Below, in pieces: positions 42,701 through 64,000 of a stretch of DNA of 64,000 nucleotides (position 1 is the first letter of the stretch; each line of letters begins with the position of its first letter). The stretch covers positions 40,486,001 through 40,550,000 of the forward strand of contig OX638156.1 of NCBI GenBank assembly GCA_951804945.1, in the 5' to 3' direction. The translations under genes and the position numbers were made by a program. The stretch comes from Podarcis cretensis (lineage: Eukaryota). A model generated the notes under the pieces. The model did no database searches and was not told where the DNA came from. It saw only the letters and a program-made list of their open reading frames with translations.

Positions 42701-45700
42701 CACTTTCCGTCACTCTCAGCCATTCCGCAGTGGTAGTAAACATATTAGATGCAAAATCCCAAGACCTCCTTGCAGTGCTGTTTCCTAATCATTGTGGTTA
42801 TGGACAAATACATGAAAACATGTCAAAAAAAGCTCAACTTTATGCTGTGATACACATGCATTCTTTGCCATTCCCAATAAGGCTGTTCCTCCTTCCATCC
42901 TCCCCCTTTGGTGTGTCTCTGCTCTCATCTTTTCCATAAGGCACATCTGATCAGATCCACCATCTGAGAAGAAATAAAAACAGATTTCCAGATTATGTAG
43001 AACTTGGGCAAAAGCTGCTGCGACCTGTGCAAACCAGATTAATATTTGCACGGATGCATGCTATTATTTTTCCCCACCTTCGGAGAATAGGAGCATCTCT
43101 CGCTGCCAGTTTTATCTAGGGCTTTTCTTCCTTTGAGCCTAAATCCTAAAAAAGTAATCTCACCTTCCCATTTTAAAAAATAATCTCTGCCAGCTGATCT
43201 GGTGGCTCTTAATGCTAGAGGTGGTGGTGGCTGTGCTTCTGGGCTGCACCCCTTCCCCCACCAGGAAGCCCCCCCCCCCCCCGCACGCTCTGCCTTGTCT
43301 GTGGGGGAGGGGAAGGGCCTCTGTGGCCTCAGCCCTTTCATGTCCAATAATGGGAGCTTAAAGAGCTGCTGCCTCGGCTGCTTCTGCTTCTGCTGCTCTC
43401 AGATGATGGGACCCAGCTGATGTGCCTTTCTGGCACCTGGCCTGTTGCCGTGGCAACGTTAGGCATTTGTGTTCCTGCAGGATATTGCTTTTCTTACACC
43501 CTTCCAGTTTCATTCTTTCGCTCGCACAAAAGAGAGGGAGAGAGAGAGAGAAGCTGCCTGCTGGAGGCTTGCTTAGTGGAAAGATGCATCACGCATGCAA
43601 AACACTCTCCCTCCCCCTCCCCGCCATCCTGGTTGAGCTTGGTAGGATGCACCATTTCACTTCATTCAAAGGCAGCCTTGCATGTGGAAACCGCCAGGCT
43701 GAATAGGGTCCAGGGAGGTCCAGCTAACTTGACAAGGCAAGGCAGTGCACATCAAAAATGGATATGTGCAAACTCGTTTGCTCGTTCCTCTTCCAGGGCA
43801 GCGGTGGCCAAGATGTGGTGCTTTCCCCTGACAGCCTCCTGGTGCCACAGCTGCTTGCTGCTCAATGCCATTCCCAGGTGGTTCCACATTGTCTATATAG
43901 GTTCAGCAGTAGGGTGTGATGGGACACCGGCCATTGCTGAGGAGAGGTAGCCGCGGGAGGCCTCTTGCCTTCATGTAGGTGCTGGGCCTTGGCCAGAGCA
44001 GATAACTTCATGGTGCTCCTGTGGAGCCTTCCTTCCTTGCTTGCAGAGAGTGCTCAAAGTTCATGATCGAGGCTCCCATATACCAAACGCTCTTCCTCTT
44101 CCAAGGCCAGGCTGTGCGGTGGAGTAACTGAGCCTCACTTGTCCCAACCCAGGGGAAGGATCAGGTGAGGAGAACCTGGGCAAGAAGCAGAGCTCACCCA
44201 CTGAGGTCACCTTCACACCATACATTTAAAGCACTGCAAATAGTCAGTGACTTCCCCCAAGTAATTCTGGGAACTGCCGTTGGCTATGGGTGCGGAGAGT
44301 TGTTCCTCTCACAGAGCTACCATGTCCCAAGTTCCCTTTGAAGAGGGATTGACTGTTAAACCACTTTTTTATAGGATTTTATAGCTCTAACGATGCTCCC
44401 CTAACAACTCTCAGCACCTTTAACAAACTATAACTCCCAGAGTTCTTTGGGGGAAGTAATGACTGTTCAGAGTGGTATTAAAGTGCTTCAAATGCGTGGT
44501 GTGATTAGGGAAGGTGGGTTAGAGTGGACACATTGCAAAAGTGAGAGGCCTATACTGAGTCACCAGATTAAAACCTTGTGTGCCGCCTCTGTTTTGGCTC
44601 CTGTGGGCTCCTGTGGGCAGATTGTGCTACCTGTGCAGTCGTGGTGATGCCACGGCCATGAATCAAGTTTGTGATACTTGTGGCAGCTTGACAAGTGGTT
44701 GAGCGACATGTTAAACATGCAACATGGCACAATACAGGACAGATGCCAAGCTTGGTGCTGTACACATGCCTGGTTTGGTGTTTTGTTTTTTTCTTTTAGT
44801 GGACCTTGGGCAGGGGCTGAAGCTGGTAAAAGACCCCAGGCCCAGCCTCTGGCACTAGGGGGCATCTTTGCCCAAGACCGTGAAAATCCTGTTGCCAGTG
44901 AGAGCAGACAACCCTGTGGGCCTAATGCTTCGTGTATCAGGTGGCATCATAGTAGGGGCAAGGGCAGTCTTCCCGGCCATGGGCCCTCCAGATGTTTCTT
45001 CTACAACTCCCTCAGCCCCAGCCAGCACAGCCATGGGGCTAATAGGAGTTGTAGTCCAAAACACCTGGAGGACACCCAAGTTGGCAGAGGCTGGGTTAGA
45101 GTGTGGGATTAGGACTGAGAAGATCCATATTCAAATTCTCTTTTTTTTTTTAATAAATTTTTTTATTAATTTCCAAATTTTTAACAAACACAAAAACAAC
45201 ATAAAAACAAACACAAAAATCATATTTTCTTTACCTTATTTCCATAAACCTCTTTTCCCGGACTTCCCCATACCTTCCCCTTTTTGCATCCTTTATTTTA
45301 TACAATTATTCAGCAACCCTTCTTAGCCAATTAAATATAAATTCATTCTCCTTTTCAATTTCACCCTAAATTAAACACAATTTACTGCTGCAATTCTACG
45401 TCTTCCTCTCCCTCAGCATTTTAGCACTCCTCAATTTTATAGTAACTCTTAAGATACATCTTAAACTTCTTCCAATCTTCTTCCACAGTCTCTTTCTCTT
45501 GGTCGCGGATTCTGCCGGTCATTTCTGCCAGTCCCATAAAGTCGATCACTTTCGCCTGCCATTCCTCCAGCATGGGTAGCTCTTGTGTCTTCCAATACTT
45601 TGCTAGGAGAATCCTTGCTGCCGTAGTAGCGTACAAAAAGAAAAGAAATACTCTGGTTTCACCTCAGATCGTATAAATCTTTCGCCTTTTACCATATTCA

Positions 45701-46292
45701 AATTCTCAGTCAGCCATGAAACTGGCCTTGGGGTCAGTCGCTATAGCTCTCGGGCCAGCCTACTGCTCAGGGTGATTGTAAAGATAAAATTAGTGGTGAG
45801 AACTATGGAGGCTACCTTGAGCTCTTTGGAGGGAAATTGGTGGGATATTAAATATATTTTCTTTTTCTTTCTTCATTTTTGCATGCTCACCTTACCTGAT
45901 CCCATTGACTGGGGGTGTTGGCTTGACAGGTAATCATTTCTTGGAAAAGCATCCCTGGTGAGATGCATGAAAACAGGTCCTTATCCTCCTGAAAGCCTCA
46001 ATTCCTGCTGACAATGGCAACAGTGACTTGCCATGCCCACGACAACCTCTAAAATGCCTATGCAGAGGACCCTCTGCACTGTTCTCATCATGAAGCCAGT
46101 GAAGAAATTTCCCTTTGGATGTTTGAATTTGCTCTTAGTTCAAAACTAGATTTGCTGGGATGTCCTGCTTATGCTCTGAGTGACATCCCTACACCACCTT
46201 CCCTTGCCCAAGGCACATAAGAGGAAAGTGAGACATTCCATCGTTGCGTTGCAAGTTTCCCCACTATCATAAATGGTGGCCGGTAAGGGACA

Positions 46293-46323
<31 letters not shown>

Positions 46324-49300
46324 CTGGATAGACATGCAGCATGGAGGTATTATACTGCACAGTTTGGATAGCTAGAAATTATGGGATGCAGGGCAGGAGA
46401 TGTGGGAGCTGCGCCATCAAGCTTGTCCATAGTCTTTCAAGTGCAGGGACGGAAGTGAGTTCATAAGAGTCTCATAGAAATCAGAAGATCAATCAGGGAT
46501 TGAATGTCAGTTCATAAGGGCAAGGCAGAACCTGTTCAAAAGACACCATGCCTGCCTGCTTGCCAGCTTAACCTTTGTGGTTGCCAGGGGCTAGTTTTAC
46601 TAGAAGCCGTCATTGTGTTTGGGGTGTACCCATTGCAGGTTAATAACAGCTGGGTATTGCTTGGCTTCCACACTCCCACCTCAAATCCTGTATTTGGCTT
46701 AATCTCCATTCATATGATTTAACCACTTTCCCATTATTTTAAATCCATGCATTTCAAGAGCGCACATTATGGCTATGACCATTAAAACATTTGTTTGCAA
46801 TTGAGTATTCCATATTCAGGATCGTTAAGAAAGGAACTGAAAATAAAACTGCCAATATTAAAGTGACCTTGTACAAACCTTTAGAGCCTCTGCATTTGGA
46901 ATACTGGTTTCAGTTCTGGTTACCGTATCTCAAAAATGGATATTGTAGAGCTGGGGAAAGTGCAGGAAAAGAGCACAGGGAGTCCTTGTCTTCTCTGCCT
47001 GCCTTGCCAGCCACCCCTTGATCTCTTTTTATTCCTTGATTCCAGGTTATCCTCAAGGACCTTGAAGTCTTGGCCGAGATTGCATCCTCTCCAGCAGGTC
47101 AGACAGAAGGACAAGGGGCACCTGACGGCCCCAGTTTACGACCTGGGCAACTGGAACTGCACATTCCTGCTCCAACTAAACCTTCCCAGGTTGGCTCCTC
47201 TGGTAAGTGCCCCTGTCTCTGGCAAAGATCTCACACGCTTTGAGCAGCCTCTGGATATTTTTTTCTCCTGGTGCAAAGTGGCACAGGGCAGCTTTAGACA
47301 GGCGAAGGCAAGTGATTCCCTGGCAGAATCGGCACCAGTATTTGAGGGAAATGTGTTTGCCACAGAGGAGGGCCACATTGTGTGGTTCCAGCTACAGCTG
47401 GAGCCTGAAGACTTCTGTGCAGCTTCTGCTTGTAGTAACGGCTGGTGGGTGGGGAGAGCGAACGTAAGCGTTTGTGTTGATAATTATACACCTCCAGACT
47501 GATGCAGAAGGAGGGTGGGAGGTGAGAAGAGAAGCAACAGTTGTGACACCAACAAGGAGGCAGTTTGGGAATCAAAAATGTTTTGCTGTGTGCCTGCCTT
47601 GAGTCCTCATGCCTGCAGAGTAGAACTGAGCCAGGTGAGAGCTTAGAAGAAGTTTGAGGGTGAGACGTAGACTCCATTTCCTGCTCTTCCCTATTGCTGG
47701 CCAATCTCCTTCATCCCATTCCTCTGCTTCTGAAATGCTGTGTCGTTGGGACAGACTGCAGGGCAGCCCCTCTGGAGCAATTCATCAGGCTGGTCTTCAA
47801 TAGAGTTTGTGTCAACAGGAAAGGAAACAATGGCTAAAGTTTTAACAGGGAATCTATATTTCCACGCAAATCAATCCCAAAGCTTTTAAGGGATGTACAT
47901 TATAGTTGTGCAGTGTGCCTAATTTCTGCCATTTGTGAATAGTGGGAGTCCTTGCCTCTGCCCAGAACTGCTTCTGATTTTGTCTTAGGGCAAGTGAGGT
48001 TTTATGAATGGGGACATCTCAGAGCGCAGGCACCCTTTTTAGCCCAGATGGATGAAACTTGATGAATGTTAGCATTAATCAACATACATAGCAACAAAGC
48101 CGCTATACAGAGGGGTGAAGGTAATAGAGGGGAGGGGAAAGACGAATGAGGATAGAGAGAGAGAGCGCACAAGTGAACAGCCAACCAGTGGTGCTGGGGA
48201 ACTGTGGCATTTGGAACACAGGTCAAAAGCACTGAAACAGCGCCACCTCCCCCTGGGTTTCCAGGCCCAGCTCAAAGGGCTGGAAGGGCTTTTTCATTAT
48301 CAGGGACTGGCTTCCCCCTCTTCCAAGTCATCAGGGGAGGCCCTCCAGGTCCACCCCCTCCCCCCATGGAGCTTAAGGATCAATGCCTCCTCTTTCCATG
48401 TGCCAGACTGCACTGTCTTCCTCTTTGCTGTCCACCTTACAAGAATAGTTAACATTCTTCAAGTAGTTTTCTTCGTCCAGGTCAATTAATTTGGGCTCTA
48501 TGTGTGTGAGAGTGCTGTATTAATCTGCTTATCCTTTGCACTGTTTCCCACGCCACCCCAAAAAAAACAAACACATTTTTACTGTCGTGCTAAACTGCTG
48601 TTTCTTACAGTAATTACTTTAGTCTTTTTTGGATTGTAATAATGTTGAATTTATTTGTAATGTTTCTTATGGTAATGTGAGACATAGCAAAGGCTTGGTG
48701 ACTTGTTTGGTTGCCTTTGAACACAAGGAACTTGGACAGGGGATTGGGTCCTGTTGGTTCTGCTGATTTTGCAGGGGCTTCCATTATCATTGGCCATGGG
48801 CTGCCATTCTGGAGAGCTTTGCACCCCTTTTCAATGGTTCTCCTTAGAGGAGCAGTTTCAATACGCTCACATCTGATGCACATTTGGCAGAAACCCCAAG
48901 CAGGGGCTTCTTGGTGGCTGCTCCCAGTCTCTGGGACTCATTTCCAAGGGGGACGAGCTTGCCCAATTTTTGACCACACACTAGTTGGCAAAAACATTTT
49001 TATTTAGACAGATAAGCTGACTTTAGAATATGTTGAAACTGGGTTTTTTTCTGGTGGTTTTGATTTTATTGATTTATCTGCCTTATTTTTCTGTTCTTCC
49101 TCACTCTGTATTTTATTGCTGTTTCATTACATCTTGTTGTACTTGTGTTGTTGCATTTAGCAACCTGGAGCACCATTTGGTGGAAAGGTGGGAAATAAAT
49201 TTAAAGATCAAAGACACAAGAACATATCAAAACGTGTATGTGGGTAGGTCACATGGCACCAGTGGAGGCTGGTTTCTTTGAAGAAAGGATAACTCACTTA

Positions 49301-52300
49301 GGATTTCCTTATTGGTAGAATACCTAGTTGACTCTTCTTATCTCTCTTCAATCTGTGGCCAATTCTGTAGCAACAAATGTGGCCCACAGAAAGAAGTGGT
49401 TGCCCAATTGGGAGTTCATTTGGGTGGTTCCCGCTCCTGCCTTGCCAGTGTTTCTTTCCAAGGTTCCAAGTTCTTCAAATACCATCTTGGTGGAGACTAA
49501 AGGCAGTGTGAGAACATCAGATGAAGCCTGAAGTTGCAACTGGATCAGGCCAAAGGTCTTGCATCTTGCATCTAGTCTTGCATCTTGTTCTACACTGGCC
49601 AAACAGTTCTCATAATGGGAACCCTGTTGCTGGTGCCAAATCTGCCCAGTAACACAGATAAGAGAGTAACAAGATGCACCTGGTGAATGAGTTGTCTCTG
49701 CTGACTCATGAAGAATTATTAACCCATTAACTGCATTCCTTAACAAACCCAGCATGCGGGACCAGAGTGCAGCAGCAACACTCTCCCCACCTGTGACTCC
49801 CAGCAACTGGCATTCCCAGACATACTGCCTCCAATAGTGCAGGGACAACATAGCCATAATGGCTAGTAGCCCTCTCCTCCATGAATTTTTCTAAAGCTGT
49901 CCAAGTCTGTGGCCATCACTGGCTCTTGTGGGAGCAAATGCCATGCTAGTTCTGCTTCAGCAGAACTTGTTCTTCTATATGTTTGGCAATTCTATCTTTA
50001 ACTATGCTTTCCACCAGCTTTCCTGGAACAGATGTTACGCTAATGAGCCTGTAATGTCTCAAATCCTTTCAAGATGCCCTTTTAAAAACTGGTATTATAT
50101 TGGCCCCTTTCCAGTGCTCAGATATGGAGGCTGATCTTCAGGGTGAGTTGCGTACTTTTGGTAGAAGATCAGCACTTTCACATTTGAGTTCTTTGCGAAC
50201 TCTTAAGAACTTGTTGAGCCTTGTCCGTTCAAAAGACAAAGAGTGGAAGTCCAAGCAACCTCATTCTTTTGTGACTTCAAATCTTCCAGTTTGCCAAAGG
50301 ATCCCAGGTAGCAGTCCAGTCCAGATCTCTAGTAGACGCACCCATAGGGTGCTTCCTTTAGGTTCAGAGCAGGTAAGAATCCATAAAAGTTCATCACCCA
50401 CCCAGATCGCACAGGTATGGCAGGTTGCTGAAGGATGCTCAGAGTGCAACATCTTGGAGATGGCCAAGGTCCTCAGGACTGGGTTTATGACATCTATGGG
50501 AGAATTGCATGCCCTCCCAAGTCATCCCTAATCCTCTTAGCCTCTGTTGGGCAGAGGGGCCACTGAACCAACCCTTGCCTGCTGTCGAAGAGACCCTCTC
50601 ACCTACTAATCAAGGCCCCACTGAGAAGGGAAGATTAAAAAATCGCAGGGAAGATTACAGATTTCATCAGCACCATGGAAATGTGAATTTTGCATGCAGG
50701 AAGCATCTATGCAGACAGCCCTTTACTTGCCTTGATTGACTCACGTTCCAGAATGCTTAAAATGTGTTTGGCAAGGTTAGGGCATGAGGGAAAGGAAGGT
50801 TTTGTTAGGCTTATCACGTTGTGCCTATGTACATGCCATATATTTAAAGCACATTGCTTCCCCCTAAGAGTGCCAGGGACAAGTTTGTTAAGGGTGCTGG
50901 GAACTGTAGCTTTGTGAGGGGTAAATTACAATTTCCAGGTTTCGGGTGGGGGGAATAGTGTGCTTTAAATGTATGGAGTGGATATAGCCTATGTATTTCC
51001 CCCCTCCCCCTGTCCCCCTGGGAGCTCACTCACATGTGCATTTCTCCCAAAGCAACTGTGTAAGAGAATTGAGTCACACAGCAAGCTTCATCCCTGAGCA
51101 GGGGCTTATCCTGGTCTCTCTTCCCTGTCTAATGCTCAGCCCACCACCCTGCACTGATTTCCCATCTGGTGCATGGATGATGAGCAGGAAGGGCAAAGGG
51201 ACAGATCATGACAGGCGGTGGAAAGGGATAATAGGGTAAACGCCAACCATAGCCTGCCTGGTTGTTTGCTTATAGTTCACCATCTGACCAGACGCTCCCT
51301 ACTTCTTCATGAGAGGGTTCCAGGTTACCTGAAGTTGTGGCTGGTTCTACCTTTGCACAGTGCCCTGGTGCTGCTATCTCGGAGGCCCGCTTCTTGGAAG
51401 CTTTTGGTCCAGCCTGTAATGCCCTGGCTAGGAAGCACGATGAGCTCATGCTGCTTGTCCCACTGTTGGCTTGCGCTGAGCACAGCTGGGAGCAAATGCG
51501 CAGGGCCTCGAGTGTGCTATTGATCCTCTGTCTGTGCGGGAGACGGGTGGGGGGAGGAGCTGGCTAGGCGGCTGCAGAGCTGTGCTTTAGATCAAGTGGA
51601 TGGCTTTCTCTTCCCTCCCCTGTAGATTATCTAAAAATAGCCTTGCAGTTGTGGCATTCATCCTAAAGGCTGCCGTGGCCCCTTTAACTCCATTCCAGTC
51701 CAAGCCTTTTATGTCACATAATAATTTGGAAAGAAGATGTCCAAGAAGCTGTGTCTCCCAGCTTTCTTACTACTTAAAACATCCATATCTGTGCAGCCCT
51801 TTTAAGGACATGGCTTTGATTTTTGTGCCCAGGACCATAATATCTGCAGCTGATTGCCAGTAGAAGTGTCTACTGGCTAGAGACTAGGAGCACAAAGAGG
51901 TTTGCCGAATTTTATGAGATGCGAACCCCCCCCCCCCCAGCATCTCATGGCCAGAAACAAGTAGGTGCAGCTCCATCATAACCGTTAAGGCAGATGGCCA
52001 GGTTTGCGGGACTGATCCTGCGCGGCACTTCTTAAGTTCTTTCTTCTGAGAGAAGAGAAGAATTTGGTGATGTGGGGGAAAGTCCAGCAGCTTTTGACAA
52101 ACATGCTTGTGCCAGAGTTTTTTTTCCTTTGGGGGGAGGATTATTCCAGCCTGAGGCCGCAGCAAATTCTGTACATTCAACAAGGCGTTTCTCCAGTTGC
52201 ACAGTGGGCTTCAGGGCCAAGAAGATGATGTGGCAAGCTGCCCGGACTCTTTCTGGGCAAAGAGAGAGCTGGGGGAGGATGGCAAAGATAGGAGGATCAG

Positions 52301-55300
52301 AAGCTGGACTGTTCTTCCAAGTAGACTCCTAGGCATGCTGTGCTAAATGGCACCTTTGCAAGCCCCCATCTCGCCCTCCCTGCTGGTTTCCATTATATGT
52401 TTGCCTGCTCAAATGGCAAACCACCAGATTGGCTCCCCAGGGTGGAAGAGAGGGCCAGTGCCATTTCATCCTCACACTTTCCTCAGAATCTGCTTATGCA
52501 AATGCTGCTGTTTGCTTTTCCTGGCGGGGTGTATTTGCTCTGCTTGCTGAGCAGATCTGCTCCCTGCTTTGCTTCCCCCTTATTTCCCCTTTGAGAAAGC
52601 TGCAGCGAGGTGTGCTGAGTTGTCTTCATGCTTGAGGAAAGTCTTTGTACTTTTTTCAAGCTGCCCTTTCTTTTATTTGGTAATATTTCTGTGACTTCAT
52701 TGGTACATGCCCTCGCTTTCACAGGGCTTCGCAAAGATGATAAGTGCTTTCTTGGTCTGGAAGTATCCTGTTTGTAGCCCAATATGAACATGTGGATCCT
52801 CAAATATTTCCTTGTACCCCACCTTTCCACCGCCCAGTGGGTTCTTCTGGGGGAGTGCAACCTTGTCAGAAACAGGCTGAACATCTAAACCTCAAGTGAG
52901 GGATAAATTTGTAAGAGTAAGTGGATTGTGCCCCACTCCCCCAGACAGAAACAACAATTTTAAAGGGGGCCGGGAGCCAGGATAATAACTATTAGCTTCT
53001 CCGGACTCGTGACTTCTGTTTTAATGAGGAGAAGGCCTGGCTTGTGATCTTGAAATACTTGGGCAGGCTCTCAGAACCAGCAGATCAGCTGCCTTGTCTT
53101 GTGAGGGCCCAGCCAGAGGGGAAGCAGAAAGCTCTGCTGTGAGTAAATGACTTGCTCTGGTGTGCTAGCTAATCCCCTTGCCAAAATGCTGGCTCTGAAT
53201 CTGTAGCTCTGTCAGACACAAAACCACCCACAGAGGTGGGTTGCCCCCTCTGTCTTCGAATTGCTTGGCTAGCACTTCATGGGCTGGACCTCTGAGATCC
53301 TAGTAGTGGGCTGGAATTAACGCCCCCCCCACCCCCCAACCAGCGATTCTTCACCTCAGACTGCTTGATCGAGAAGCAAGTTGCTTTCCCCTCCCCTTGT
53401 GATGGGCTTGGAGGGGGGGAGGTGAAGCAAAGGATTTTGATCTTTACAGTGTCAAATGCCTTGACTTATGCTCCTCCCAGTGTATCCCAGCCCATGAAAG
53501 AAGTCAGCGGTGTTCTCTGGGAAGAGAGGTCAGGGAGGCAGCAGATGTCACAAAGCCAGCCACTTGTGCTAATCTGAGCTGGCTTGCGAAATAGGCTTTG
53601 GGGATTAGGCACTCAGAGCAGGGCCTGAGTCAGGGACCCACAGAGCAAGAGGACAGGAGGATGCTGTGCTTAGAGCCAGACATGGCCTTCCTGGAGTCTT
53701 GCTTGGGCATCACCCATTTCCAGCCTGGCATTCAGATTTCATTTCTGGAGGGAAGTTCCTAGCGTCTGGTTGTGGTGAAGTCTCGCGTACCACATGGGTT
53801 GACCTTCAAACCCTCTTAATCAGCAGTTTTTCCCATGCGGAGAAATGTGTGCATTAACCCTTCCCTGGCCTGGGGCTGATGGGCGCTATAGTCCAAAAAC
53901 ATCTGGAGGGCAGCAGGCTGGGGAAAAGCTGGTTTGCCCCATCAGGTGTTGACATTTTGTAGGCGACTGTTTTGCCTTGTGTTCTGGCCTGGGATTCACC
54001 CAATAAACCTAAGATGTTTCTAAATGTGTGTACATTCCACCCACCCACTTTTTCACTGTGCACCTCTCTTGCTATAAAACCCTGCAGAGGTACGAAGCAT
54101 CCCTGTGAAGATCCCAGGTCTTGTGCCCAATATGCAGAACTGACTGCCTTAGGCAGGGCAGCCATCCCTTTGGGTCCAAATTGGCTTTCTTGATTGCAGC
54201 CATGCCTCCCCTTTGTGCTTCACCACCACGACCGCCCTCCCCGTGACCTCCACACTTTCCCCTTCTGCCTTGTTTCAGTCAAACAAGAGCTTACTCCGGA
54301 GAGGGGTCTTTCTCCTGCCATGCGCCTCTGGAAATGGGCAGGGCAGTCAAGGGTGTGTGGCGAGGGACAGGCACACACCCAGGTGCCTTGTAGTTGGGGA
54401 GGGAAGGAATGAAGACTGGCTTGTGTCTCCATGAGCCTTGGGAAGGGGGAGCCTACATCTTAACAACATCTGTTTCAGTGATGAATTGAGAGGCAAATGT
54501 CTTGGGGCGGTTCTGTTTTTGTTCTTTGAGCTGCTCTATTTTTATCTTCCCATGTGATGTTCCTTTACATCATATTTACCAAGTTGAAATACAAAACATC
54601 CTGTAGTAGTATTAACCGGCTGGAAAGTCTCTCCTGCACATCAGGGTTCACTTAAGATAATCTGCCTGCCTTCCCTGGTGGCGGCGGCGGCAACAGCAGC
54701 AGCAGCAGCAGCAACAATCCTAGTGCATGTTTGGGGATGGAGAAGGGGGTGTGGGGATCTGCTCTTGCACCCGCTCATAGGAGCTTGATGGTCAAAAGGC
54801 AGCTTCTGCCTCCTGAGTGGTTCCTACTTTTAGAAGCATAGGATTGGTGGAGCTGCAGCTCTCTGAAGCCCTTTCACAGCCCCATCTGCCTGGCGGACAG
54901 CTGGGGGAGGGGGATGAGGGCTGGAAGATCATTGGTCTCAAGGCACTCCAGGAACTTTCCAGTGGCCCCCCTCCAACCCCCCTCCGTTCCTGCAGAAGAG
55001 CCAAGAGACAGAAAAATAGTTGCTCTGTGAATGACACAGAATTTCTTCCATCTTGCTCTGCCCCAGAGTCACAAGCAAGAGATACTGAGCAAAATGCTTT
55101 AGACTAGAGGAAGGGGTTTGTAGAGGCTCTCAGAGCAGTTTTCTGTTTCAGGGGGGAACTTGGAAAAGAGCTTGAATAGCAAAGGGCAAGCAAGCAAATT
55201 TGGGGCTAATGTACATCCAAAATGCTCTGTTGGCCTTTACAGACAGTTATGACACCTACCGTAGTTTGGGGACTGAAGCTGCCATGGTTGGGCTGGCAGA

Positions 55301-57570
55301 CTCCTGTTGTGGTGACGGAAGAGGAAAAAAGGTAGCGGGAGGGAGTCGTGCTGAATCTCCTGGGCCCCTCATTAGCATTTAGAACTTTTGGCCTCCTCAG
55401 AACCTTTCTCTGTTGACAGTGGAGGGCACAGTGTTGAGCTAGGGCTGCTTCTGTTTTACAAAAAGCTACCATAATGCAGTGCCGAGAGACAATTGTGCTG
55501 CCACAAGAGGGATGACTCTGCAGGCCAGTGCCAAATTGCAGTCTTCTGTGGTGTTGACCATCTGTATGGAACTGCGGGAGAGGAGAGCAAGTTAAGAATG
55601 TCTAGCCCTCCTGTTGCCTTTACGCAAGGAATAAAGCTGGGCTTGTAGGGAATTTTCGTGGGCAAAAGCATATCATATAGTTAAACGGTGTAGAGCTGGT
55701 CTAAAGAAAGAAAATTGCCTGCAGGAGACTTCCCCAACCAGCTTGTTTTGGAATACTGCTCCCACCAGTGCTAGTCCAAAACAACTGGTGTTTCTGACTG
55801 ATGGTGAGCTACCTGAGTAGGCCCATGCGTATCACACAGTTTCCTTGAACTGCTTATCCTTTTAGGGAATCTTTGCAGAATCCTCCCATACACCCAGCGT
55901 TTGCAGATGCCAGAGAGGTAAAACTTGCTTCAGGACAGTTTCTGCAGAAGTAATGAACACAGGCTAAGCCTGCAAACTGCTGGGTTGCTGGGCAGAACTC
56001 GCCATTATCTTCACCTCTGAGGAAGTAGAGGGAGAGAAGAGAAACCTTAAGGGAAAGGGAAGCTCAGGCACTTGTTTAATACCAGGTGAGGATGTGTGTG
56101 ATAGAGAAGTTGAATTTAGGCACATGTAGCATTTTCCCGCTTGATCAAGCTGTATGGCTGACCAGGTGGTGGAGTTGAGGAGAAATTCAAGCTGTCTTCT
56201 TTCTGAGCTTCCTGCTAGAGTGCAGTCTGCTGTGGCAGGCCACGGGAACATGATGATGACTGGCGAAGGCATGTGATGCTCACCTTGGCAGTGAGAGTTA
56301 ACACCATCCTAGTTGCTTTCCAGGAAACCTCTGCAGCTTCTCCCTGAGCAATTCCCCTGAGACAACCCTACTCAGTTGCAACTCACCCTTGTGCTCAGTG
56401 TGGGCAGCTGAGGTGTCCCAACGCAACACTTGTGGGCTTAGCCTTCTCTGTATGTGTACTAACAGCCAGTCTGGTGTGTTGCGTATCTGTGAAGCCTCTG
56501 ATATGTGAGTATCAGCATGAATGAATCGGTTCAACTGTGTTTTCCTAACACCTCCTCCTGCCTTTCTAGTATTTCTGCTCCTATAAATAGTAAGGCGGGT
56601 TTAATTGTATCTACTTGCTATGCCATCGTGGGCGAGCCACCCATCGGTGGCAGAAGCTGGAACAGGGGAAGTTAAAGGGATCTGGGAGGCGTGGGTGGGA
56701 CTCTTGGAAGCCTCTCTGCTGCCTGACTGTTTCTATGTTGTAACCATGCAGATTAATTGAAAACTGGCTGGGCAGAGATTAGGAGCTGTGAGATGGTGGG
56801 CGCAGGAATACAAAGCTGAGGTCTTGTTATGGATGTACCTTCATAGCAGGAAGTGGGTCTCCTCTCTGCATGCCTCACACTGACCACCGCTTGTACAGTG
56901 TATCCAAATTTAACAAATTTTGCTGCTGAACCAGCAGCAGATTGAAATAGTGAAGCTGCAGCCTGTTTCCTGCTTGTGTTGTGCATTGTGCAGCAATATT
57001 TGCCAACTCCTGACCCCAAATGAGACGTCTGTGATTTTACAAGCTGCCTGGCGGGCAGGGAGAGAGGCAGTCAGAGTGGCTTTTCTGGTCCATTCTGCAG
57101 TGGGGCACATCTTCTTTCCTTGTCGTTCATGAGTGTGGAGCCCAGGAGTGCTGACTGAAGAGCCATGCATTGACTTCCCCATCAACAGCCGATCCCTGGA
57201 ACTGTCTGAACTGCAACTTTTTTTCCTCTTGAAAAGGCATGATCAGCATCTGACTTGTATAAGGGGGAAAAGAGACCTATGTTAGGGTGCAATCCTTGAA
57301 GCTTTTCCTGTGACCTGGACATTCTGCCCGATTACATCAGGTCTGACCCTTGCAGATAACTTCCTTTGAAGAAGGCCCTGTTCAGCCTTGAGTATCAGTT
57401 CCCACCCACCCCTTGTCTTTCTGTTGTTTTCCATATATTTCGACAGGATAGTAAGCCTTTGCAAGAGTCAAGAAACAAGTGGCTTGGGCACGTAAGTGCC
57501 TCCAGACTCTCCAAAACCTTACAAAAACAAAGGAACTGGGTGCTCGTGAAGAAGGGAGGGAGGGAGGGAG

Positions 57571-57622
<52 letters not shown>

Positions 57623-58856
57623 AGGAAGTACATGTTTTGTTTCCTACATCCAAAGAGTTATACCCTAAGTTTGAGGAGAGGCTTTGAGAATGATATTTGC
57701 CTGCTCATTCTGCACCTTTTTAACATTATGCTGTTTGATTGAAGGTTTAAACAAGTATTAAGGTTGATCTTTATTGCCAGTGCCTACCTCAATGACCACC
57801 ACCCTTTTTAGCAAGAGGACATACCTTTCCCCTTCAAAAGAAGTTTGGCTTCGGGGTTGTCTTTTGCCTTGGTTCTCCATGGCCTAGTGACCGACTTGAA
57901 TCACAGTTTATCTATGCTGGCTGGAGCTGATGGAAGTTGTAGTCTGAAACATCTGGAGGGCATCAAGTTGGCAAAGGCTGTTTCTTGGACATATTGAGAG
58001 TCCTGTTGTGCAAGGTAGTCTTGTGGGTTCATAGAGCATCTCTCCTGAGATGCTTCATTTCCATAGGATGTTTCGATTTCCATTTTTCCATAACCTAGCC
58101 TGCTCTATATCTGTTCTTAGCTGGGTTACTTTAACTGCTCTTTGGAATGACTGCCTAATAATCAAGTTTTCACCTTTATCTGTCAGCTTCCAGCTTTGGT
58201 TTTCTATTGCTGTGCCAAGTTTGTGCCAATGTCTACATATAGGAAATGCATTTTTATGCCTTTTCTGTTCAGAGGCATCTCCACACCTTTCCTCTCCCTG
58301 TGACTCAGAGGAGGACCAGAGTTCCTGATCTCTTTTATGACTGTAAAACAAAGGGCAGGCTAAAACAAATGGTAGTGTGCCTTCACTATGTATTGCAGGG
58401 GAAGGTCCACAGTAGCTCAGTGGAAGAGCATCTACCTTGCATGCAGGAGGTCCCAGGTTCAATCCCCCATGGCATCTCCATGTAGGGTTGGGAGATCCAT
58501 GCTTGAAAGTCTGGAGAACTGCTGCCAGTCATTGTGGACAACAGGAGCTGCTTGGTATAAGGCAACTTCATGTAGCTGGAGAGAGTAAAGCTGCCACTTC
58601 AAATCAGAGCTAGGATTGCCTGCTGTGATCACGGGTGACAAGTCGAGCTTAGAAACCCACCTGTACTTCTACAGGTGCTTCTTCCTTAAACAGAGTTAAC
58701 TTCCTCTCTCCTCCTCCTTCCAGGTACCAAAGGCATGGAGTGCTCTCCCTCGACGCCCACCATGAACTCCTACTTCTATAAGTTCATGATAAACTTGCTC
58801 AAGAGATTCAGCAGTGAGCGGAAGCTCCTGGAGTTGCGGGGAGCTTTCATCATCAG
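21606..58856 (+). CDS. VAC14: VAC14 (ArPIKfyve; HEAT-repeat scaffold of the PIKfyve-FIG4 complex), coding exons 1-14 spliced; 3' exons beyond window
   Basis: Starts [35 protein letters not shown]. 14 exons join in frame (1667 nt) to ...[14 protein letters not shown](R), closely matching vertebrate VAC14. Confidence 0.98.
22409..22559 (+). CDS. VAC14: VAC14 exon 2: LVREFVAQN...SIALGK
   Basis: ttttag| ... |gtaggt, 151 nt. Confidence 0.96.
23484..23651 (+). CDS. VAC14: VAC14 exon 3: DSGLYLKE...FDGLSK
   Basis: ttgcag| ... |gtaatg, 168 nt. Confidence 0.96.
24164..24226 (+). CDS. VAC14: VAC14 exon 4: [21 protein letters not shown]
   Basis: tcctag| ... |gtacag, 63 nt. Confidence 0.96.
26248..26355 (+). 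CDS. VAC14: VAC14 exon 5: DIVTESNN...RQFIISW
   Basis: ttctag| ... |gtaagt, 108 nt. Confidence 0.96.
27117..27460 (-). mobile_element. Sauria SINE (Squam1-type)
   Basis: (ACCTT)n-type tail (gtaaggtaaggtaaagg on +), body ggtcatgtggccagcatgactaa...tatttatctacttgcac...ctgctaggttggcag, tRNA-related head with B-box (ttcgaacc on +). Confidence 0.88.
27951..28060 (+). CDS. VAC14: VAC14 exon 6: ILVLESVPD...SKEIRK(M)
   Basis: agttag| ... |gtgagt, 110 nt. Confidence 0.96.
28550..28656 (+). CDS. VAC14: VAC14 exon 7: CEVALGEF...IHCQAS
   Basis: aagcag| ... |gtaagt, 107 nt. Confidence 0.95.
28915..29049 (+). CDS. VAC14: VAC14 exon 8: DDLIQLTAM...YDDRKK(S)
   Basis: ctgcag| ... |GTATCCTT (U12-type donor), 135 nt. 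Confidence 0.95.
29050..30045 (+). other. VAC14: U12-type (minor spliceosome) GT-AG intron, VAC14 intron 8
   Basis: 5' splice site GTATCCTT; branch-site TTCCTTAC at 30023-30030, about 15 nt before the AG; no polypyrimidine tract. Confidence 0.92.
29578..29860 (+). mobile_element. CR1 LINE 3' end, inside the U12 intron
   Basis: gtgatagccaccaacttggatggctttaaaagaag...gacaaattcatggag...agatgctggactggatgggcc. Confidence 0.75.
30046..30204 (+). CDS. VAC14: VAC14 exon 9: [10 protein letters not shown]...QEVTSG(G)
   Basis: gtgcag| ... |gtaagt, 159 nt. Confidence 0.93.
30933..30993 (+). CDS. VAC14: VAC14 exon 10: [19 protein letters not shown](S)
   Basis: ctgcag| ... |gtaaaa, 61 nt; bridges phase 1->2 between exons 9 and 11. 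Confidence 0.88.
32720..33016 (-). mobile_element. RTE-clade LINE 3' end with 9-bp TSD, inserted in a CR1 3'UTR remnant
   Basis: Minus-strand ORF ends with a C2H2-like [21 protein letters not shown]; (CAG)n tail; TSD CCCACAAGC at 32711-32719 and 33017-33025. Confidence 0.8.
33715..34134 (-). mobile_element. 5'-truncated L1 (ORF2 C-terminus + 3'UTR) with TSD of up to 17 bp
   Basis: AGCACAAGCTATTATTA at 33698-33714 and 34135-34151; minus strand reads [34 protein letters not shown], homologous to the L1 at 45.4-45.6 kb. Confidence 0.85.
34884..35028 (+). CDS. VAC14: VAC14 exon 11: TERIQVTLN...YIKTPRK
   Basis: cttcag| ... |GCAAGT (GC donor), 145 nt. Confidence 0.94.
35029..36615 (+). other. VAC14: GC-AG intron, VAC14 intron 11
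   Basis: AAG|GCAAGT; joining KTPRK to MFRHTDSLF requires this donor. Confidence 0.9.
35167..35830. mobile_element. Non-autonomous Tc1/mariner (Tigger-like) DNA transposon
   Basis: Terminal inverted repeats cattggtaccttggttctcaaac / gtttgaaaactgaggtaccactg, flanked by TA on both sides. Confidence 0.85.
36616..36681 (+). CDS. VAC14: VAC14 exon 12: [22 protein letters not shown]
   Basis: tttcag| ... |gtgagc, 66 nt. Confidence 0.96.
40590..41218 (+). mobile_element. Old L2 ORF2 C-terminal/3' fragment interrupted by a 46-bp L2-tail insertion
   Basis: Reads [12 protein letters not shown]...GLP...KLQLVQN|EVAKL...LRELHWL; insertion 40750-40795 flanked by CAGAAT repeats. Confidence 0.75.
44205..44505. 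mobile_element. Palindromic MITE (cacaccatacatttaaagcac...gtgcttcaaatgcgtggtgtg)
   Basis: Terminal inverted repeats; related shorter copy at about 50825-50990. Confidence 0.65.
45141..45645 (-). mobile_element. 5'-truncated L1 (ORF2 C-terminus, 3'UTR, poly(A))
   Basis: ORF 45421-45636 [15 protein letters not shown]...[10 protein letters not shown]; poly(T) from 45141 on +; 16-bp TSD CCATATTCAAATTCTC at 45125-45140 and 45692-45707. Confidence 0.9.
45648..45692 (+). pseudogene. U5 snRNA 5' fragment (nt 1-45), retrocopy fused to L1
   Basis: ATACTCTGGTTTCACCTCAGATCGTATAAATCTTTCGCCTTTTAC; 43/45 identical to the 5' end of human U5B as I recall it, ending in invariant loop I GCCUUUUAC. Confidence 0.9.
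46295..46323. repeat. (TG)n microsatellite
   Basis: Direct reading. Confidence 0.95.
46815..46975 (+). mobile_element. CR1 ORF2 fragment
   Basis: [31 protein letters not shown]...(frameshift) [11 protein letters not shown], matching the CR1 'RPHLEYCVQFWSP...DIVELEKVQ' motif. Confidence 0.75.
47046..47202 (+). CDS. VAC14: VAC14 exon 13: [19 protein letters not shown]...QVGSS(G)
   Basis: ttccag| ... |gtaagt, 157 nt. Confidence 0.95.
49535..49945 (-). mobile_element. CR1 3' end fragments
   Basis: cagcaactggcattcccagacatactgcctc...ggctagtagccctctcctccatgaattt; similar to 59300-59740. Confidence 0.65.
57573..57618. repeat. (GA)n microsatellite preceded by (GGGA)n
   Basis: Direct reading. Confidence 0.95.
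58404..58573 (+). mobile_element. tRNA-Ala-derived squamate SINE (Squam2-like)
   Basis: Head gtagctcagtggaagagcatctaccttgcatgcaggaggtcccaggttcaatccc...ggcatctcca with A and B boxes, then body ctggagaactgctgccagtc...gtataaggcaacttc. Confidence 0.75.
58724..58856 (+). CDS. VAC14: VAC14 exon 14: [20 protein letters not shown]...GAFII(R)
   Basis: ttccag| ... |gtgagg, 133 nt. Confidence 0.96.
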
Positions 58857-59064
58857 GTGAGGCCACATCCTGCCTTGAGTTGCCACCTCTGTGTTTCCAA
58901 ATGCCTTTCTGCTATCTGTGTGTTCCTGTGTACAGGTTTGGTGCCTGCCTCAAGTGCTGGGCTGGGTGGGGCTTAGTTCTCTTCCTGCAACCAGTGGTAC
59001 CTTCCTCTCAGGTCCCTCATGACCCTTCTGTTGGTGTGAGGTCAGGAGACAGGCTGTCTATGGG

Positions 59065-59297
59065 CTGTCGGTAGTGGCACCTGCCCTGTGGAACGCCCTC
59101 CCGTCAGATGTCAAGGAAATAAACAACTACCTGACTTTTAGAAGACATCTGAAGGCAGCCCTGTATAGGGAAGCTTTTAATGTTTGCTGTTTTACTGTGT
59201 TGGATGTTTTAATTTGTTGGAAACTGCCCAGAGTGGCTGGGGCAACCCAGTCAGAGGGGCAGCATATAAATAATAAATCATTATATTATTATTATTC
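59065..59297 (+). mobile_element. L2-type LINE 3' end with (TTA)n tail
   Basis: VAPALWNALPSDVKEINNYLTFRRHLKAALYREAF, same 3'UTR as 14653-14940. Confidence 0.85.
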
Positions 59298-59299
59298 CT

Positions 59300-59742
59300 T
59301 TGAACTTAACATTCTTTGATCAAGCCAATGGCCCATCTAATCCATCATCCTAATCTCACAGTGGTCATCCAGATGCCTGTGGGAAACCTGCAAAAAGGAT
59401 CCAAGCTCAAGATTAAGCTCCCCTTCTGCAGAGTCCAGCAGCTGGTATTCAGAAGCATTGCTGCCTCGCAACTGCAGAGGCAGAGGAGAGCCATCATGGC
59501 TACTAGCCATTGATAGCCCTCTCCTCCAAAAATTTGTCTAATTCTCTTTTAAAGCCATTCAAGTTGGTGGCCACCACTTCCTCCTGTGGGAACGAGTTCC
59601 ATAATTTAATTATGCGGTGCATGAAGAAGCACTTTATTTTGTCTGTCCTGAGTCTTTCAACGTTCAGCTAAGTTGGACGTCCATGAGTTCTAGTGTCTAG
59701 AAGAGCAGGAGAGAAACTTTTCTCTCTCCACTTTCTCCATGT
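59300..59742 (-). mobile_element. CR1 LINE 3' end
   Basis: Reverse complement of the CR1 piece at 29578-29860 (aatttgtctaattctcttttaaagccattcaagttggtggcca). Confidence 0.8.
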
Positions 59743-60392
59743 TTGTTCAGCTTTTCCTCACCAAAGTCAGGGGAGGGGAGAGCAGAGCCTCTGGCTCTTT
59801 GATAAACGGAGATACAATGGAGGCCAAGCAGCTGTGAGCTCTACTTCTGTGGTGGGCTGCAGGCTTGCCTGGGACAATGCTCTGCTCAGCTGGGGCAAAA
59901 CTAGGCTGGCCAGTCGCCCTCTTTCATCAGAGTGTCTCTCTCCCTCCCCCCCCCCCCCTGCACTCGGCTGCCGCCAGCTCATTTGCTTTATGGAAAGGAG
60001 CAGCTCATGAGAGGCCAACTGTTGTTCATGAATGCCTTTTAGTCCAAGTGAACTGCATGCAGCAGCCCATGTGAGGGGAGGCAGCAGCCACAGGTTTCAA
60101 GCCTTGGGTTTCCTGTGTGTCACAGAGCCAGGCCTGCTTTTGGCTACCCTAGATTTTGAGGATGCATTCCTGAATGAGAAACGAAAGGATTCTGTTCAGA
60201 CCGAGAGCCTACAGTCTTTGGCACCATTAGGATGTGCCTCTGTGTGTGTCAAGCAGAGAGAACACTTCTTAAATCTCTCCAATTGTGGGTCAGAGGATAC
60301 AAGGGCAGCTGTGCCGGCAGCCTCACTCTTGCCATGGGCTTGTGGGAAGCCAGATGATGGCAAAGGGGGAGCAGTGTGTCTACAAACCCACT

Positions 60393-61180
60393 CATAGAAT
60401 CAGAATAGTAGAGTTGGAAGGGATCCCATCCAGTCCAATCCCCTGCAATGCAGGAATCAGAGCTAAAGAATCCCTGACAGATGGCCACCCAGCCACATGT
60501 TTAAAAACCTCCAGTGAAGGAGAGTCCATTCTACTGTCGAACAGCTCTTTACTGTCAGAAAGTTCTTCCCAATGTTTAGTTGGAATCTCCTTTCTTGTAC
60601 AGTGGTGCCCCGCGAGACGAATGCCTCGCAAGACGGAAAACCCGCTAGACCAAAGGGTTTTCCGTTTTGGAGGCGCTTCGCAAAACAAATTTCCCTATGG
60701 GCTTGCTTCGCAAGACGAAAATGTCTTGCGAGTTCCTGCGGGGGTTTTTCCCTTTTTTCCCCCTAAGCCCTAAGCCGCTTATCAGCTGATCCGCTAAAAG
60801 CCGCTAAACCGTCAATAGCGCTAATCCGCTAAGCTGTCAGTGGGCTTGCTTCGCAAGACGAAAAGACCGCTCTACGAAGAGCCTCACGGAACGGATTAAT
60901 TTTGTCTTGCGAGGCACCACTGTAATTTGAATCCATCGGTTCATGTCCTCTCCCTCTGGAGCAGCAGAAAACAATCTTGCCCCATTTTCCATGTGGCAGC
61001 CCTTCAGATATTAGAAGATGGCTATCGTGTCACCTCTCAGTATTCTCTTCTCCAGGCTAAATATACTCAGCTCCCTCAACTGTTCCTCATAAGACTTGGT
61101 TTCCCAGACCCTTGATAATCTTGGTCGCCCTCCTCTGCGTGTGTTCAAGCTTGTCAATATAATTCCTAAACTGTGGCACT
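60393..61180 (-). mobile_element. CR1 LINE 3' part, interrupted by a MITE
   Basis: Tail catagaatcagaatagtagagttggaaggg; minus strand reads DSPSLEVFK; sequence resumes after the MITE. Confidence 0.8.
60600..60922. mobile_element. CpG-rich Tc1/mariner (Tigger-like) MITE with TA TSD
   Basis: ta|cagtggtgccccgcgagacgaa ... ttttgtcttgcgaggcaccactg|ta; internal repeat gggcttgcttcgcaagacgaaaa twice. Confidence 0.88.
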
Positions 61181-62153
61181 CTCATACTGCAAGAGTGGAT
61201 CACCTTGAGAACAAATTATATTTTATTATTTATGTCTATTTTTATCCATGTCTGCAGCTCTTTTCCAAGTCATGCCCAAAAGAGAAGCGATTGCTCCTGG
61301 GAGCTTATAAACCACATTTTGGCTATTGCGAGGGAGGGACGGAAGAAAGGCAGATGGGTGAAGAGAAGGAGGGAGTGCTTCTGTTTTCCTCTGTCTTTCA
61401 AATGGTTTGGCAGATGCAGGGCTGAGTGAAGGACATGGGTGAAAGGGCAACTTTTCCAAAATATTAAGAGCCACAGGATCTTCCTGACAGGCTTCTTTCC
61501 TAAAGGCCCTCAGGACAAATTCTGGGGTTTGGCCGCCAAATGCATACCCCAAATGCATCAGTAGCCCATGAAGCATCTGATCAGCGAGTCCAGGTTCATT
61601 TCTAGGTCAGGCCAGCAGACCTTTCAAGCCGTCCTCCCCTCCCTCCTTCCTTCCACATTTTGGTTTTGAGTAGGACACAAACTCTCATAACTCCACTTAC
61701 GTAAGAGTCATTAGGATGCACGGCAGCCCACTCTGTGGCTGTTGACCATTTGGCTTGCAAGGTTGGTGGCAATCGGAGCGTTACTTTGCTGTAGCTAGAA
61801 CTTCGATTCATTTTTAATTGCTCTGTGGCGAGAGGCACAAAGAACCCGCCCTTTTGTGAAGGTTGCCCTTGTTTTTTGGTTGGCATGTCCTGAACATGAA
61901 TGGCTGTTCTTGTTCACTGCTGTTGTTGTCTTCGACACGTCCAAATTGTTAAGACTGGGAGCCATTGGCCAATATTTTTGTTGGCTTCACAATGCCTCCC
62001 TCTCGCTATTCTGGCTGTGCCGCTGGGGCTTGCCTTGACATCCCTTCCCTTGAGTTTCCTCAGAGAGGAAGACTCGGGTGTGTCAAAATGATGAAATCAA
62101 TCGCCACAACTCACTCTACAGTGATACCCCGATGCAGGAATAATGCTCTACGT

Positions 62154-62585
62154 CAGTGGTTCCCAAAGTGGGCAGTACTGAGCTTACTAAGGGAACCTTT
62201 AAGAGGCAAGGAGGCGTGGTGATAGGAGAGTGCTGGAGGTGCAAATGATTATCAGACTTTGAAAAGCTGGTATCACTGGATCAAGTTCACCAGCTTTGTT
62301 GAATTAATTAAATTGAACAGTTTTAATTGGATTTTGAATAAACATGAAATTAATTGTTACCTGTTTGAATTTTATTATGTTATTATTCTCCTTAGTGGGT
62401 CATGCAACCCACTGTTTTGAATAGTGCTTTTCATAGCATAGGGAAGGCGGCACTGGGGATGAGTTTATGGAACCAAGGGGTCAGTGTATTTTTATCTGGT
62501 GAAATGCCCTGAGATCTTTGGGTGAAGAGCAGTATATGAATATAATAAACAAAAATAAATGAAACAAGAAATTTGGGAACCACTG
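62154..62585. mobile_element. hAT (Charlie-like) non-autonomous DNA transposon
   Basis: Terminal inverted repeats cagtggttcccaaa / tttgggaaccactg; partial 8-bp flank match ctctacgt / ctctagaa. Confidence 0.75.

Positions 62586-63629: not shown

Positions 63630-63630
<1 letters not shown>

Positions 63631-63666
<36 letters not shown>
63631..63666. repeat. (CAG)12 intronic trinucleotide repeat
   Basis: Direct reading. Confidence 0.95.
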
Positions 63667-63669
<3 letters not shown>

Positions 63670-64000
63670 GTTGACATTCTCTTCCCCGTTCGCATGGCCA
63701 GGGAATGCTCATCCTGAGGATTGCAGGGGGTCACGCTGGGCTCCCCCTGTTCTTAGAAGCTGGAAGTCTTTGGGTCTTGCATTGTTTTTAGATATAGGAG
63801 GACTGGATTTTTCTGTTTTGCTCAATGCACTTTGGCAGTGGGTTTCTCAGAGGATGGGAGAGGAGAAGGTGGCTTGTTGGGTTATAAACCAGTGGAATGG
63901 AAGTCACAGTATTCAAGTCCCTCTTGCATGACCAGAGAAGGCCACAGGGCAAGGGGAGCCAGAGCACAACATGGGTGCCTCTCAGTGCTGCTAATGGGGC

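What the first reader, a model, noticed from the sequence alone, without database searches (positions are those of the whole stretch)
45125..45707. Head-to-head L1 / U5-snRNA chimeric retro-insertion inside one 16-bp TSD
Seen in sequence: a single insertion bounded by CCATATTCAAATTCTC (45125-45140 and 45692-45707) holds two pieces. One is a minus-strand 5'-truncated L1 (poly(A), 3'UTR, ORF2 end). The other is U5 snRNA nt 1-45 on the PLUS strand (45648-45692). The U5 piece starts exactly at U5 nucleotide 1, abutting the L1 truncation point, and stops in single-stranded loop I (GCCUUUUAC), where its last C is shared with the TSD. Established: snRNA/L1 chimeras (mainly U6, also U3/U5) typically have both parts in the same orientation, and twin priming normally inverts part of the same RNA. 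Inference: the second nicked DNA end primed reverse transcription in loop I of a different RNA (U5), copied it to the cap, and the two cDNAs were then joined, i.e. twin priming in trans. If recurrent, this would point to a U5-L1 ribonucleoprotein association or an unusual second-strand route in squamate L1.
Basis: partly seen in the sequence, partly recalled or inferred. Interest (0 to 1): 0.8.

Follow-up and report, generated by a model that had tools for sequence, protein, structure and literature searches.

The report
Backwards U5 snRNA piece on L1
A lizard L1 insertion in a VAC14 intron carries, inside the same 16-bp target duplication, a backwards copy of the first 45 bases of U5 snRNA; it is real, but this kind of chimera and its twin-priming explanation are already published for human L1.

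Summary
The 16-mer CCATATTCAAATTCTC occurs only at 45125-45140 and 45692-45707. Between the copies, the minus strand carries A11, a 3'UTR and the last 74 codons of an L1-clade ORF2. The plus strand carries U5 snRNA positions 1-45 (Rfam RF00020, 34.4 bits) at 45648-45692. The U5 piece ends inside the hairpin loop of the Rfam structure, and its last C is shared with the duplication. The geometry fits second-strand priming on U5 RNA, that is, twin priming on a second RNA.

This is not new. Doucet et al. 2015 (PMC4476161) described four human U5/L1 or U5/SVA chimeras of this form, truncated at U5 nt 36, 43, 46 and 48, and proposed this model. Law and Burns 2026 (PMC13174262) report that all U5 segments in mammalian U5/L1 chimeras are 3'-truncated and 80% are antisense. 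The new point is the host, a squamate with its own L1 lineage.

The scan had already noted six similar head-to-head snRNA chimeras on other DNA of this genome; those notes are mostly unchecked.

The parts
45125..45140 (.). Target-site duplication, left copy (CCATATTCAAATTCTC). Its 3' end on the plus strand is the inferred first-strand primer, with the nick at 5'-TTCTC/AG-3'.
   Evidence: exact 16-mer found only here and at 45692-45707
45141..45151 (-). Poly(A) tail of the L1 (T11 on the plus strand). AATAAA lies just upstream on the minus strand.
   Evidence: read directly
45152..45420 (-). L1 3'UTR, including an A/C-rich 12-nt repeat at 45183-45219
45421..45645 (-). Last 74 codons plus stop of an L1-clade ORF2 ([19 protein letters not shown]...KIEEC*), 5'-truncated
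   Evidence: open frame and stop. (92 relatives; P0006 at 9e-14). (relatives align from ..LF(L/M)YATTAAR and continue upstream with KPEAFLLG). (P0088 matches human LINE-1 ORF2p at 1.5e-127).
45646..45647 (.). Two A's at the L1/U5 joint of undecided origin: L1 codon remainder, microhomology or untemplated
   Evidence: No same-subfamily L1 copy was available.
45648..45692 (+). U5 snRNA nt 1-45, inverted relative to the L1, ending in the hairpin loop (loop I). The last C is shared with the TSD.
   Evidence: RF00020, model 1-45/117, 34.4 bits, E 1.2e-4; structure line shows positions 36-45 as loop
45692..45707 (.). Target-site duplication, right copy. On the minus strand its 3' end (...ATATGG-3') is the inferred second-strand primer.

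Best explanation
This is one L1 retrotransposition event that produced a two-part insertion. Shown: an L1 3' end (496 nt plus A11) on the minus strand and U5 snRNA nt 1-45 on the plus strand lie head to head inside one perfect 16-bp target duplication, in an intron region of VAC14, which runs on the plus strand. Inferred steps: (1) The L1 endonuclease nicked the plus strand at 5'-TTCTC/AG-3', and that 3' end primed reverse transcription on the L1 poly(A); the cDNA stopped about 74 codons before the ORF2 stop. (2) The minus strand was nicked 16 bp away. Its 3' end (...ATATGG-3') annealed in the exposed loop I of a U5 snRNA (G pairs with C45) and was extended by the reverse transcriptase to U5 nt 1. 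(3) The 3' ends of the two cDNAs met at 45647/45648 and were joined and filled in. This is twin priming with a second RNA as the second template, the model drawn for human U5/L1 chimeras by Doucet et al. 2015. The fragment has no expected function. It is a young, neutral intronic insertion: the L1 part is antisense and the U5 piece is sense to the host gene.
For: The 16-mer is unique to the two borders. U5 model positions 1-45 lie on the strand opposite the L1, starting at position 1 next to the L1 5' end and stopping in the loop exactly at the TSD with one shared C. The L1 is identified by its ORF2 tail. Strand logic, read directly from the sequence: the plus strand of 45141-45647 has the polarity of L1 first-strand cDNA primed from 45140, and the minus strand of 45692-45648 has the polarity of U5 cDNA primed from the right-hand TSD, so both 3' ends meet at the joint as twin priming requires. 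The nick site is pyrimidine-run/purine only when read in the L1 orientation (TCTC/AG); in the U5 orientation it reads TATGG/AT. Doucet et al. note the same asymmetry. Published human cases have the same architecture and the same loop breakpoints at nt 36-48, and antisense is the majority form for U5. A perfect TSD, a pure A11 and an open 74-codon frame indicate a recent, undisturbed event.
Against: Strict microhomology at the priming site is only 1 nt; it becomes 3 contiguous pairs only if a G-U pair with U46 and a T-A pair with A47 are counted, and those U5 positions come from my memory of the U5 sequence, not from a tool. The nick site matches TTTT/AA at only 3 of 6 positions. The anatomy cannot tell priming by the target's own 3' end from capture of a ready-made U5 cDNA. 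The exact L1/U5 joint is uncertain by 2-5 nt.
Confidence: 0.7

Rival explanations
1. Capture rather than priming. A U5 cDNA made elsewhere (self-primed or aborted) was used as a bridging template or ligated in during end joining at the 5' junction of an ordinary 5'-truncated L1 insertion. Equivalently, the L1 cDNA switched template onto a free U5 cDNA.
For: It gives the same final orientation. Only 1 nt of strict microhomology exists at the U5/TSD border, which fits microhomology-mediated end joining as well as priming. Law and Burns raise the possibility that RNA fragments are cleaved before reverse transcription for tRNA halves and 5S rRNA.
Against: It needs an extra, unexplained primer for a cDNA that starts precisely in loop I. 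The recurrence of loop I breakpoints next to the TSD in independent human events is more simply explained by the target end annealing to an exposed loop.
Confidence: 0.15
2. Two independent insertions. A tailless 3'-truncated U5 retropseudogene and an L1 landed side by side, and the 16-bp repeat belongs to only one of them.
For: 3'-truncated U5 pseudogenes broken in the same loop exist as stand-alone L1-mobilised copies in human. No orthologue was examined here.
Against: The TSD encloses both parts with nothing left over. The U5 piece has no TSD of its own and would have had to land exactly between the L1 5' end and the TSD. The poly(A) abuts one TSD copy and the U5 breakpoint abuts the other.
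Confidence: 0.04
3. The U5-like 45-mer belongs to a repeat family: it is part of this L1 subfamily's consensus, or it is the head of a propagating chimeric element or SINE.
For: snRNA-headed SINEs are known (Kojima, cited). No same-subfamily L1 copy was available for comparison.
Against: All ORF2 relatives continue upstream of ..LF(L/M)YATTAAR with the conserved ORF2 sequence KPEAFLLG.. and the CxxC..HxxxxC motif, not with anything U5-like. The piece is antisense to the ORF. To its right comes the TSD and single-copy flank, not a SINE body.
Confidence: 0.04
4. Assembly artefact: a mis-join created the juxtaposition.
For: The junctions were not checked with reads. The runs of the likely same species hold only 0.65-0.81 of the sampled words.
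Against: A mis-join does not produce a perfect 16-bp direct repeat placed exactly at a poly(A) on one side and at a loop breakpoint of an snRNA that starts at nt 1 on the other.
Confidence: 0.03

Closest known systems
Inverted 3'-truncated U5 snRNA/L1 (and SVA) chimeras of the human genome, twin-priming model (Doucet et al. 2015, Mol Biol Evol, PMC4476161; Group IV, fig. 1A c'-d')
   Same: Opposite transcriptional orientation inside one TSD. The U5 starts at nt 1 at the joint with a 5'-truncated L1. The U5 is broken in loop I (36, 43, 46, 48 in human; 45 here). There is shared sequence with the target at the U5 border. The nick site looks like an L1 site only in the L1 orientation.
   Different: The host is a squamate and the L1 belongs to a lizard lineage (best protein hit is a Podarcis protein at 72% identity). 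The nick site is more degenerate (TCTC/AG). Doucet et al. screened the lizard genome for U6 only.
Antisense small-RNA/LINE-1 chimeras catalogued across mammals (Law and Burns 2026, Cell Genomics, PMC13174262)
   Same: All U5 segments are 3'-truncated and 80% are antisense. 5S rRNA (nt 1-45) and tRNA halves behave likewise and are ascribed to twin priming.
   Different: That catalogue covers mammals only and was validated by multi-species alignment. Here no orthologue could be examined.
U6/L1 chimeras (Buzdin et al. 2002/2003, Garcia-Perez et al. 2007; RtcB ligation, Moldovan et al. 2019, PMC6789731)
   Same: An snRNA copy at the 5' end of a 5'-truncated L1 inside one TSD, made in one event.
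   Different: U6 is full length and in the same orientation as the L1 (template switch or RNA ligation). Here the snRNA is inverted and 3'-truncated, which neither route can produce.
[quoted passage not shown]
   Same: Second-strand 3' end used as a second primer. Two cDNAs are joined 3' end to 3' end. An inverted 5' segment abuts the TSD.
   Different: The inverted segment comes from a different RNA (U5) instead of an upstream part of the same L1 RNA.

Membership tests
Inverted (twin-priming type) U5/L1 chimeric retro-insertion (Doucet et al. 2015) | snRNA part and LINE part in opposite orientation, both enclosed by one TSD | tested here: met
   U5 on the plus strand at 45648-45692. L1 ORF2 tail, 3'UTR and poly(A) on the minus strand at 45141-45647. 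Unique 16-bp repeat at both borders.
Inverted (twin-priming type) U5/L1 chimeric retro-insertion (Doucet et al. 2015) | U5 begins at nt 1 at the joint with the L1 and is 3'-truncated in loop I (nt 36-48) | tested here: met
   Model positions 1-45 of 117. Positions 36-45 are marked as hairpin loop in the Rfam structure line.
Inverted (twin-priming type) U5/L1 chimeric retro-insertion (Doucet et al. 2015) | LINE part is a 5'-truncated L1 with a poly(A) abutting the other TSD copy | tested here: met
   A11 abuts the TSD. The 74-codon tail matches ORF2 C-termini. Relative P0088 matches human LINE-1 ORF2p at E 1.5e-127.
Inverted (twin-priming type) U5/L1 chimeric retro-insertion (Doucet et al. 2015) | L1 endonuclease-type nick site when read in the L1 orientation | tested here: inconclusive
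   The inferred nick is 5'-TCTC/AG-3': a pyrimidine run then purines, but only 3 of 6 positions equal TTTT/AA. The site preference of this lizard L1 is not known to me.
Inverted (twin-priming type) U5/L1 chimeric retro-insertion (Doucet et al. 2015) | Complementarity between the target 3' end and U5 at the breakpoint | tested here: inconclusive
   One shared C at 45692. Further pairing (G-U46, T-A47) rests on U5 nt 46-47 recalled from memory.
Inverted (twin-priming type) U5/L1 chimeric retro-insertion (Doucet et al. 2015) | Single event: the orthologous or allelic empty site holds one copy of the TSD and neither part | not testable with these tools
No lizard genome collection is on hand. Flank ORFs are not in the protein collection.
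U6/L1-type template-switch or RNA-ligation chimera | snRNA full length and in the same orientation as the L1 | tested here: not met
   Opposite orientation, and only 45 of 117 positions are present.
Functional U5 snRNA gene | Full-length U5 with 3' stem and Sm site, reaching the Rfam gathering score | tested here: not met
   34.4 bits against a 40-bit cut-off. The model stops at position 45 and is followed by the TSD.

The most novel reading that the evidence does not exclude
Inverted chimeras between Sm-class snRNAs (U1, U2, U5) and retroposons may be far commoner per megabase in this lizard than in human, and may be made by more than one LINE clade (L1, and BovB/RTE through the Sauria SINE). 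First-reader notes list six further head-to-head cases in the 734 windows noted so far, against seven twin-priming-type cases in the whole human genome in Doucet et al. 2015. If so, lizard genomes would be a natural system for studying how the second strand is primed in target-primed reverse transcription, and for asking whether intronic targets favour spliceosomal RNAs.
Probability: 0.3. Interest if true: 0.55.

Novelty: new member of a known kind. Interest (0 to 1): 0.3.

Why it matters
It extends a rare but published class of L1 by-product, inverted U5 loop-I-primed chimeras, from mammals to a squamate with an independent L1 lineage. That suggests use of the exposed U5 loop as a second-strand priming site is a general property of L1-type machinery and of the conserved U5 structure, not a mammalian quirk. 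By itself it changes no model. Its value is as one data point for a genome-wide census in lizards.

Tried and rejected
- **Rfam, 3-kb scan:** cmscan at E up to 10 did not list U5. The hit appears only when the stretch ends at the breakpoint, so that truncated alignment is allowed.
- **Direct family searches of the 74-aa tail:** Pfam, NCBIfam and PDB gave nothing meaningful. The word-index protein search gave one chimeric hypothetical protein. I therefore used the exhaustive representative search.
- **Other L1 copies in the window:** a self-BLAST of the insertion found no other copy of this L1, so the L1/U5 joint cannot be fixed to the base.
- **Reads:** Rfam gathering scans were run beside them (1-45661 and 45699-64000) and found nothing.
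- **Flanking ORFs:** ten flanking ORFs were looked up by exact sequence as a route to orthologous contigs. None is in the collection.
- **Empty-site search:** the reconstructed empty site (left flank joined to right flank) has no reference and the searchable DNA collections hold no lizard genomes, so that search was left out.
- **"Intron 12":** not verified. I confirmed only that VAC14 lies on the plus strand upstream.

Full report
**Observation**

The region was read directly. The 16-mer CCATATTCAAATTCTC stands at 45125-45140 and 45692-45707. It has no other match in the 64-kb window even with two mismatches, and none of 100 shuffles gave two matches. The repeat cannot be extended on either side: t versus a before it, t versus a after it.

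Directly right of the left copy lie eleven T's (45141-45151), which are a poly(A) on the minus strand. Upstream of them on the minus strand comes an AATAAA-containing A/T-rich stretch. On the minus strand, frame 3 (offset 2) reads 74 codons without a stop. They run from [19 protein letters not shown] to KIEEC, followed by a stop at 45423-45421.

**Identity of the LINE part**

Pfam, NCBIfam and a PDB sequence search found nothing meaningful for the 74 residues. The word-index search found one hypothetical Podarcis protein with 72% identity over 65 residues.

Because these searches left the protein open, I ran the exhaustive representative search. It gave 92 hits at E of 0.001 or better, nearly all matching at their C-termini. 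Among the longer hits, P0088 (940 aa) carries RVT_1 and aligns with human LINE-1 ORF2p residues 322-1238 at E 1.5e-127. The window peptive matches P0088 at residues 869-935. The window piece is therefore the extreme C-terminus of an L1-clade ORF2.

In the alignment the relatives read ...KPEAFLLG...K..LF(L/M)YATTAARIL..., with the CxxC...HxxxxC motif further upstream. The window sequence follows them up to its first residues and then stops. So the L1 is 5'-truncated at about 45645-45647, and the U5-like stretch is not part of an ORF2 consensus.

**Identity of the U5 part**

A 3-kb cmscan did not list U5. When the stretch ends at the proposed breakpoint, cmscan reports RF00020 (U5) at 45648-45692 on the plus strand. 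The hit covers model positions 1-45 of 117 at 34.4 bits and E 1.2e-4, is flagged 3'-truncated, and is identical to the family consensus at 38 of 45 positions, including the whole invariant loop sequence.

The score is below the 40-bit gathering threshold, as expected for 45 of 117 positions. Scaled to the whole window and all families, which is my own arithmetic and not a tool result, the sequence match alone would be worth E of roughly 0.02-0.1. What makes it convincing is the position. It starts at model position 1 within two bases of the L1 5' end and stops exactly where the TSD begins. The Rfam structure line marks positions 36-45 as hairpin loop, so the break is in loop I.

**Strand logic (read from the sequence)**

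- The plus strand of 45141-45647 has the polarity of L1 first-strand cDNA primed by the plus-strand 3' end at 45140. The nick is 5'-TTCTC/AG-3'.
- The minus strand of 45692-45648 has the polarity of U5 cDNA primed by the minus-strand 3' end ...ATATGG-3' of the right-hand TSD copy.
- The 3' ends of the two cDNAs meet at 45647/45648.

This is the topology of twin priming, with U5 RNA as the second template. The nick site is a pyrimidine run followed by purines only when read in the L1 orientation. It matches TTTT/AA at three of six positions. Strict shared sequence at the U5/TSD border is one C. Counting a G-U pair with U46 and a T-A pair with A47 would give three pairs, but those U5 positions come from my memory of the U5 sequence.

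**Literature**

Doucet et al. 2015 (PMC4476161) found seven U5 copies associated with retrotransposed sequences in the human genome. Four are in the opposite orientation to an L1 or SVA inside one TSD. They are 3'-truncated at positions 36, 48, 43 and 46, all in the same single-stranded loop. They show complementarity to the insertion site, and their cleavage sites fit L1 endonuclease only in the L1 orientation. The authors propose twin priming directly on U5 snRNA (their fig. 1A c', d'), and they note that this type of chimera is mainly seen with U5.

Law and Burns 2026 (PMC13174262) report that all U5 segments in U5/LINE-1 chimeras are 3'-truncated and 80% are antisense. They ascribe antisense 5S rRNA (nt 1-45) and tRNA-half chimeras to twin priming.

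Doucet et al. screened Anolis for U6 only. I found no paper describing U5 chimeras in squamates. The host and its L1 lineage are therefore the new element.

**Context**

The insertion therefore lies inside VAC14: the L1 is antisense and the U5 piece is sense to the gene. I did not verify that the intron is number 12. No functional snRNA gene lies in the window.

**What could not be done**

There is therefore no read-level evidence for the junctions and no empty site.
- Ten flanking ORFs were not in the protein collection, which closed the route to orthologous contigs.
- The reconstructed empty site has no reference, so no search was run with it.

**Recurrence**

Notes of this scan, mostly unchecked, list six further head-to-head snRNA/retroposon chimeras in the same genome: U2/L1, U2/Sauria SINE (a follow-up agreed), U2/HAL1-like, another inverted U5, and two with U1. 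These are leads, not evidence. They suggest that a census would be worthwhile.

**Verdict**

It is a single-event inverted U5(1-45)/L1 chimera, best explained by second-strand priming in U5 loop I (confidence 0.7). The main rival is capture of a ready-made U5 cDNA at the 5' junction (0.15). It is a new member of a known kind, of modest interest.

Noticed in passing
same genome, other windows (notes s1-838179, s1-839425, s1-838191, s1-836330, s1-842482, s1-842508): Six further first-reader notes describe U1, U2 or U5 5' fragments fused head to head to L1, other LINEs or the Sauria SINE inside one TSD. One was confirmed by a follow-up agent. No U6 chimera is noted. This hints that inverted Sm-class snRNA chimeras are frequent in this lizard.
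   Followed up: partly
window 44983-45073: A roughly 90-nt hairpin-forming repeat lies about 50 bp left of the insertion. It gives weak sub-threshold hits to mir-3160 and mir-5408. Its motif GGAGTTGTAGTCC recurs at 10697, 10965, 31826 and 45045, so it is a dispersed hairpin repeat, not a specific miRNA.
   Followed up: partly
window 23439-24068 (+) and 9772-10473 (+): There is a Vac14 Fab1-binding region exon (Pfam E 3.1e-21) and, upstream, a CFAP65/HYDIN-type Ig domain exon (E 4.1e-12). Both are on the plus strand.
   Followed up: partly
window 13420-13532 (-): Weak similarity (71-80% over 41-77 nt) to the A/C-rich 3'UTR repeat of the L1. It may be the tail of another LINE copy or just low-complexity sequence.
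   Followed up: no
window 46295-46323: A perfect (TG)14.5 microsatellite. It drew a spurious SCARNA7 alignment.
   Followed up: no
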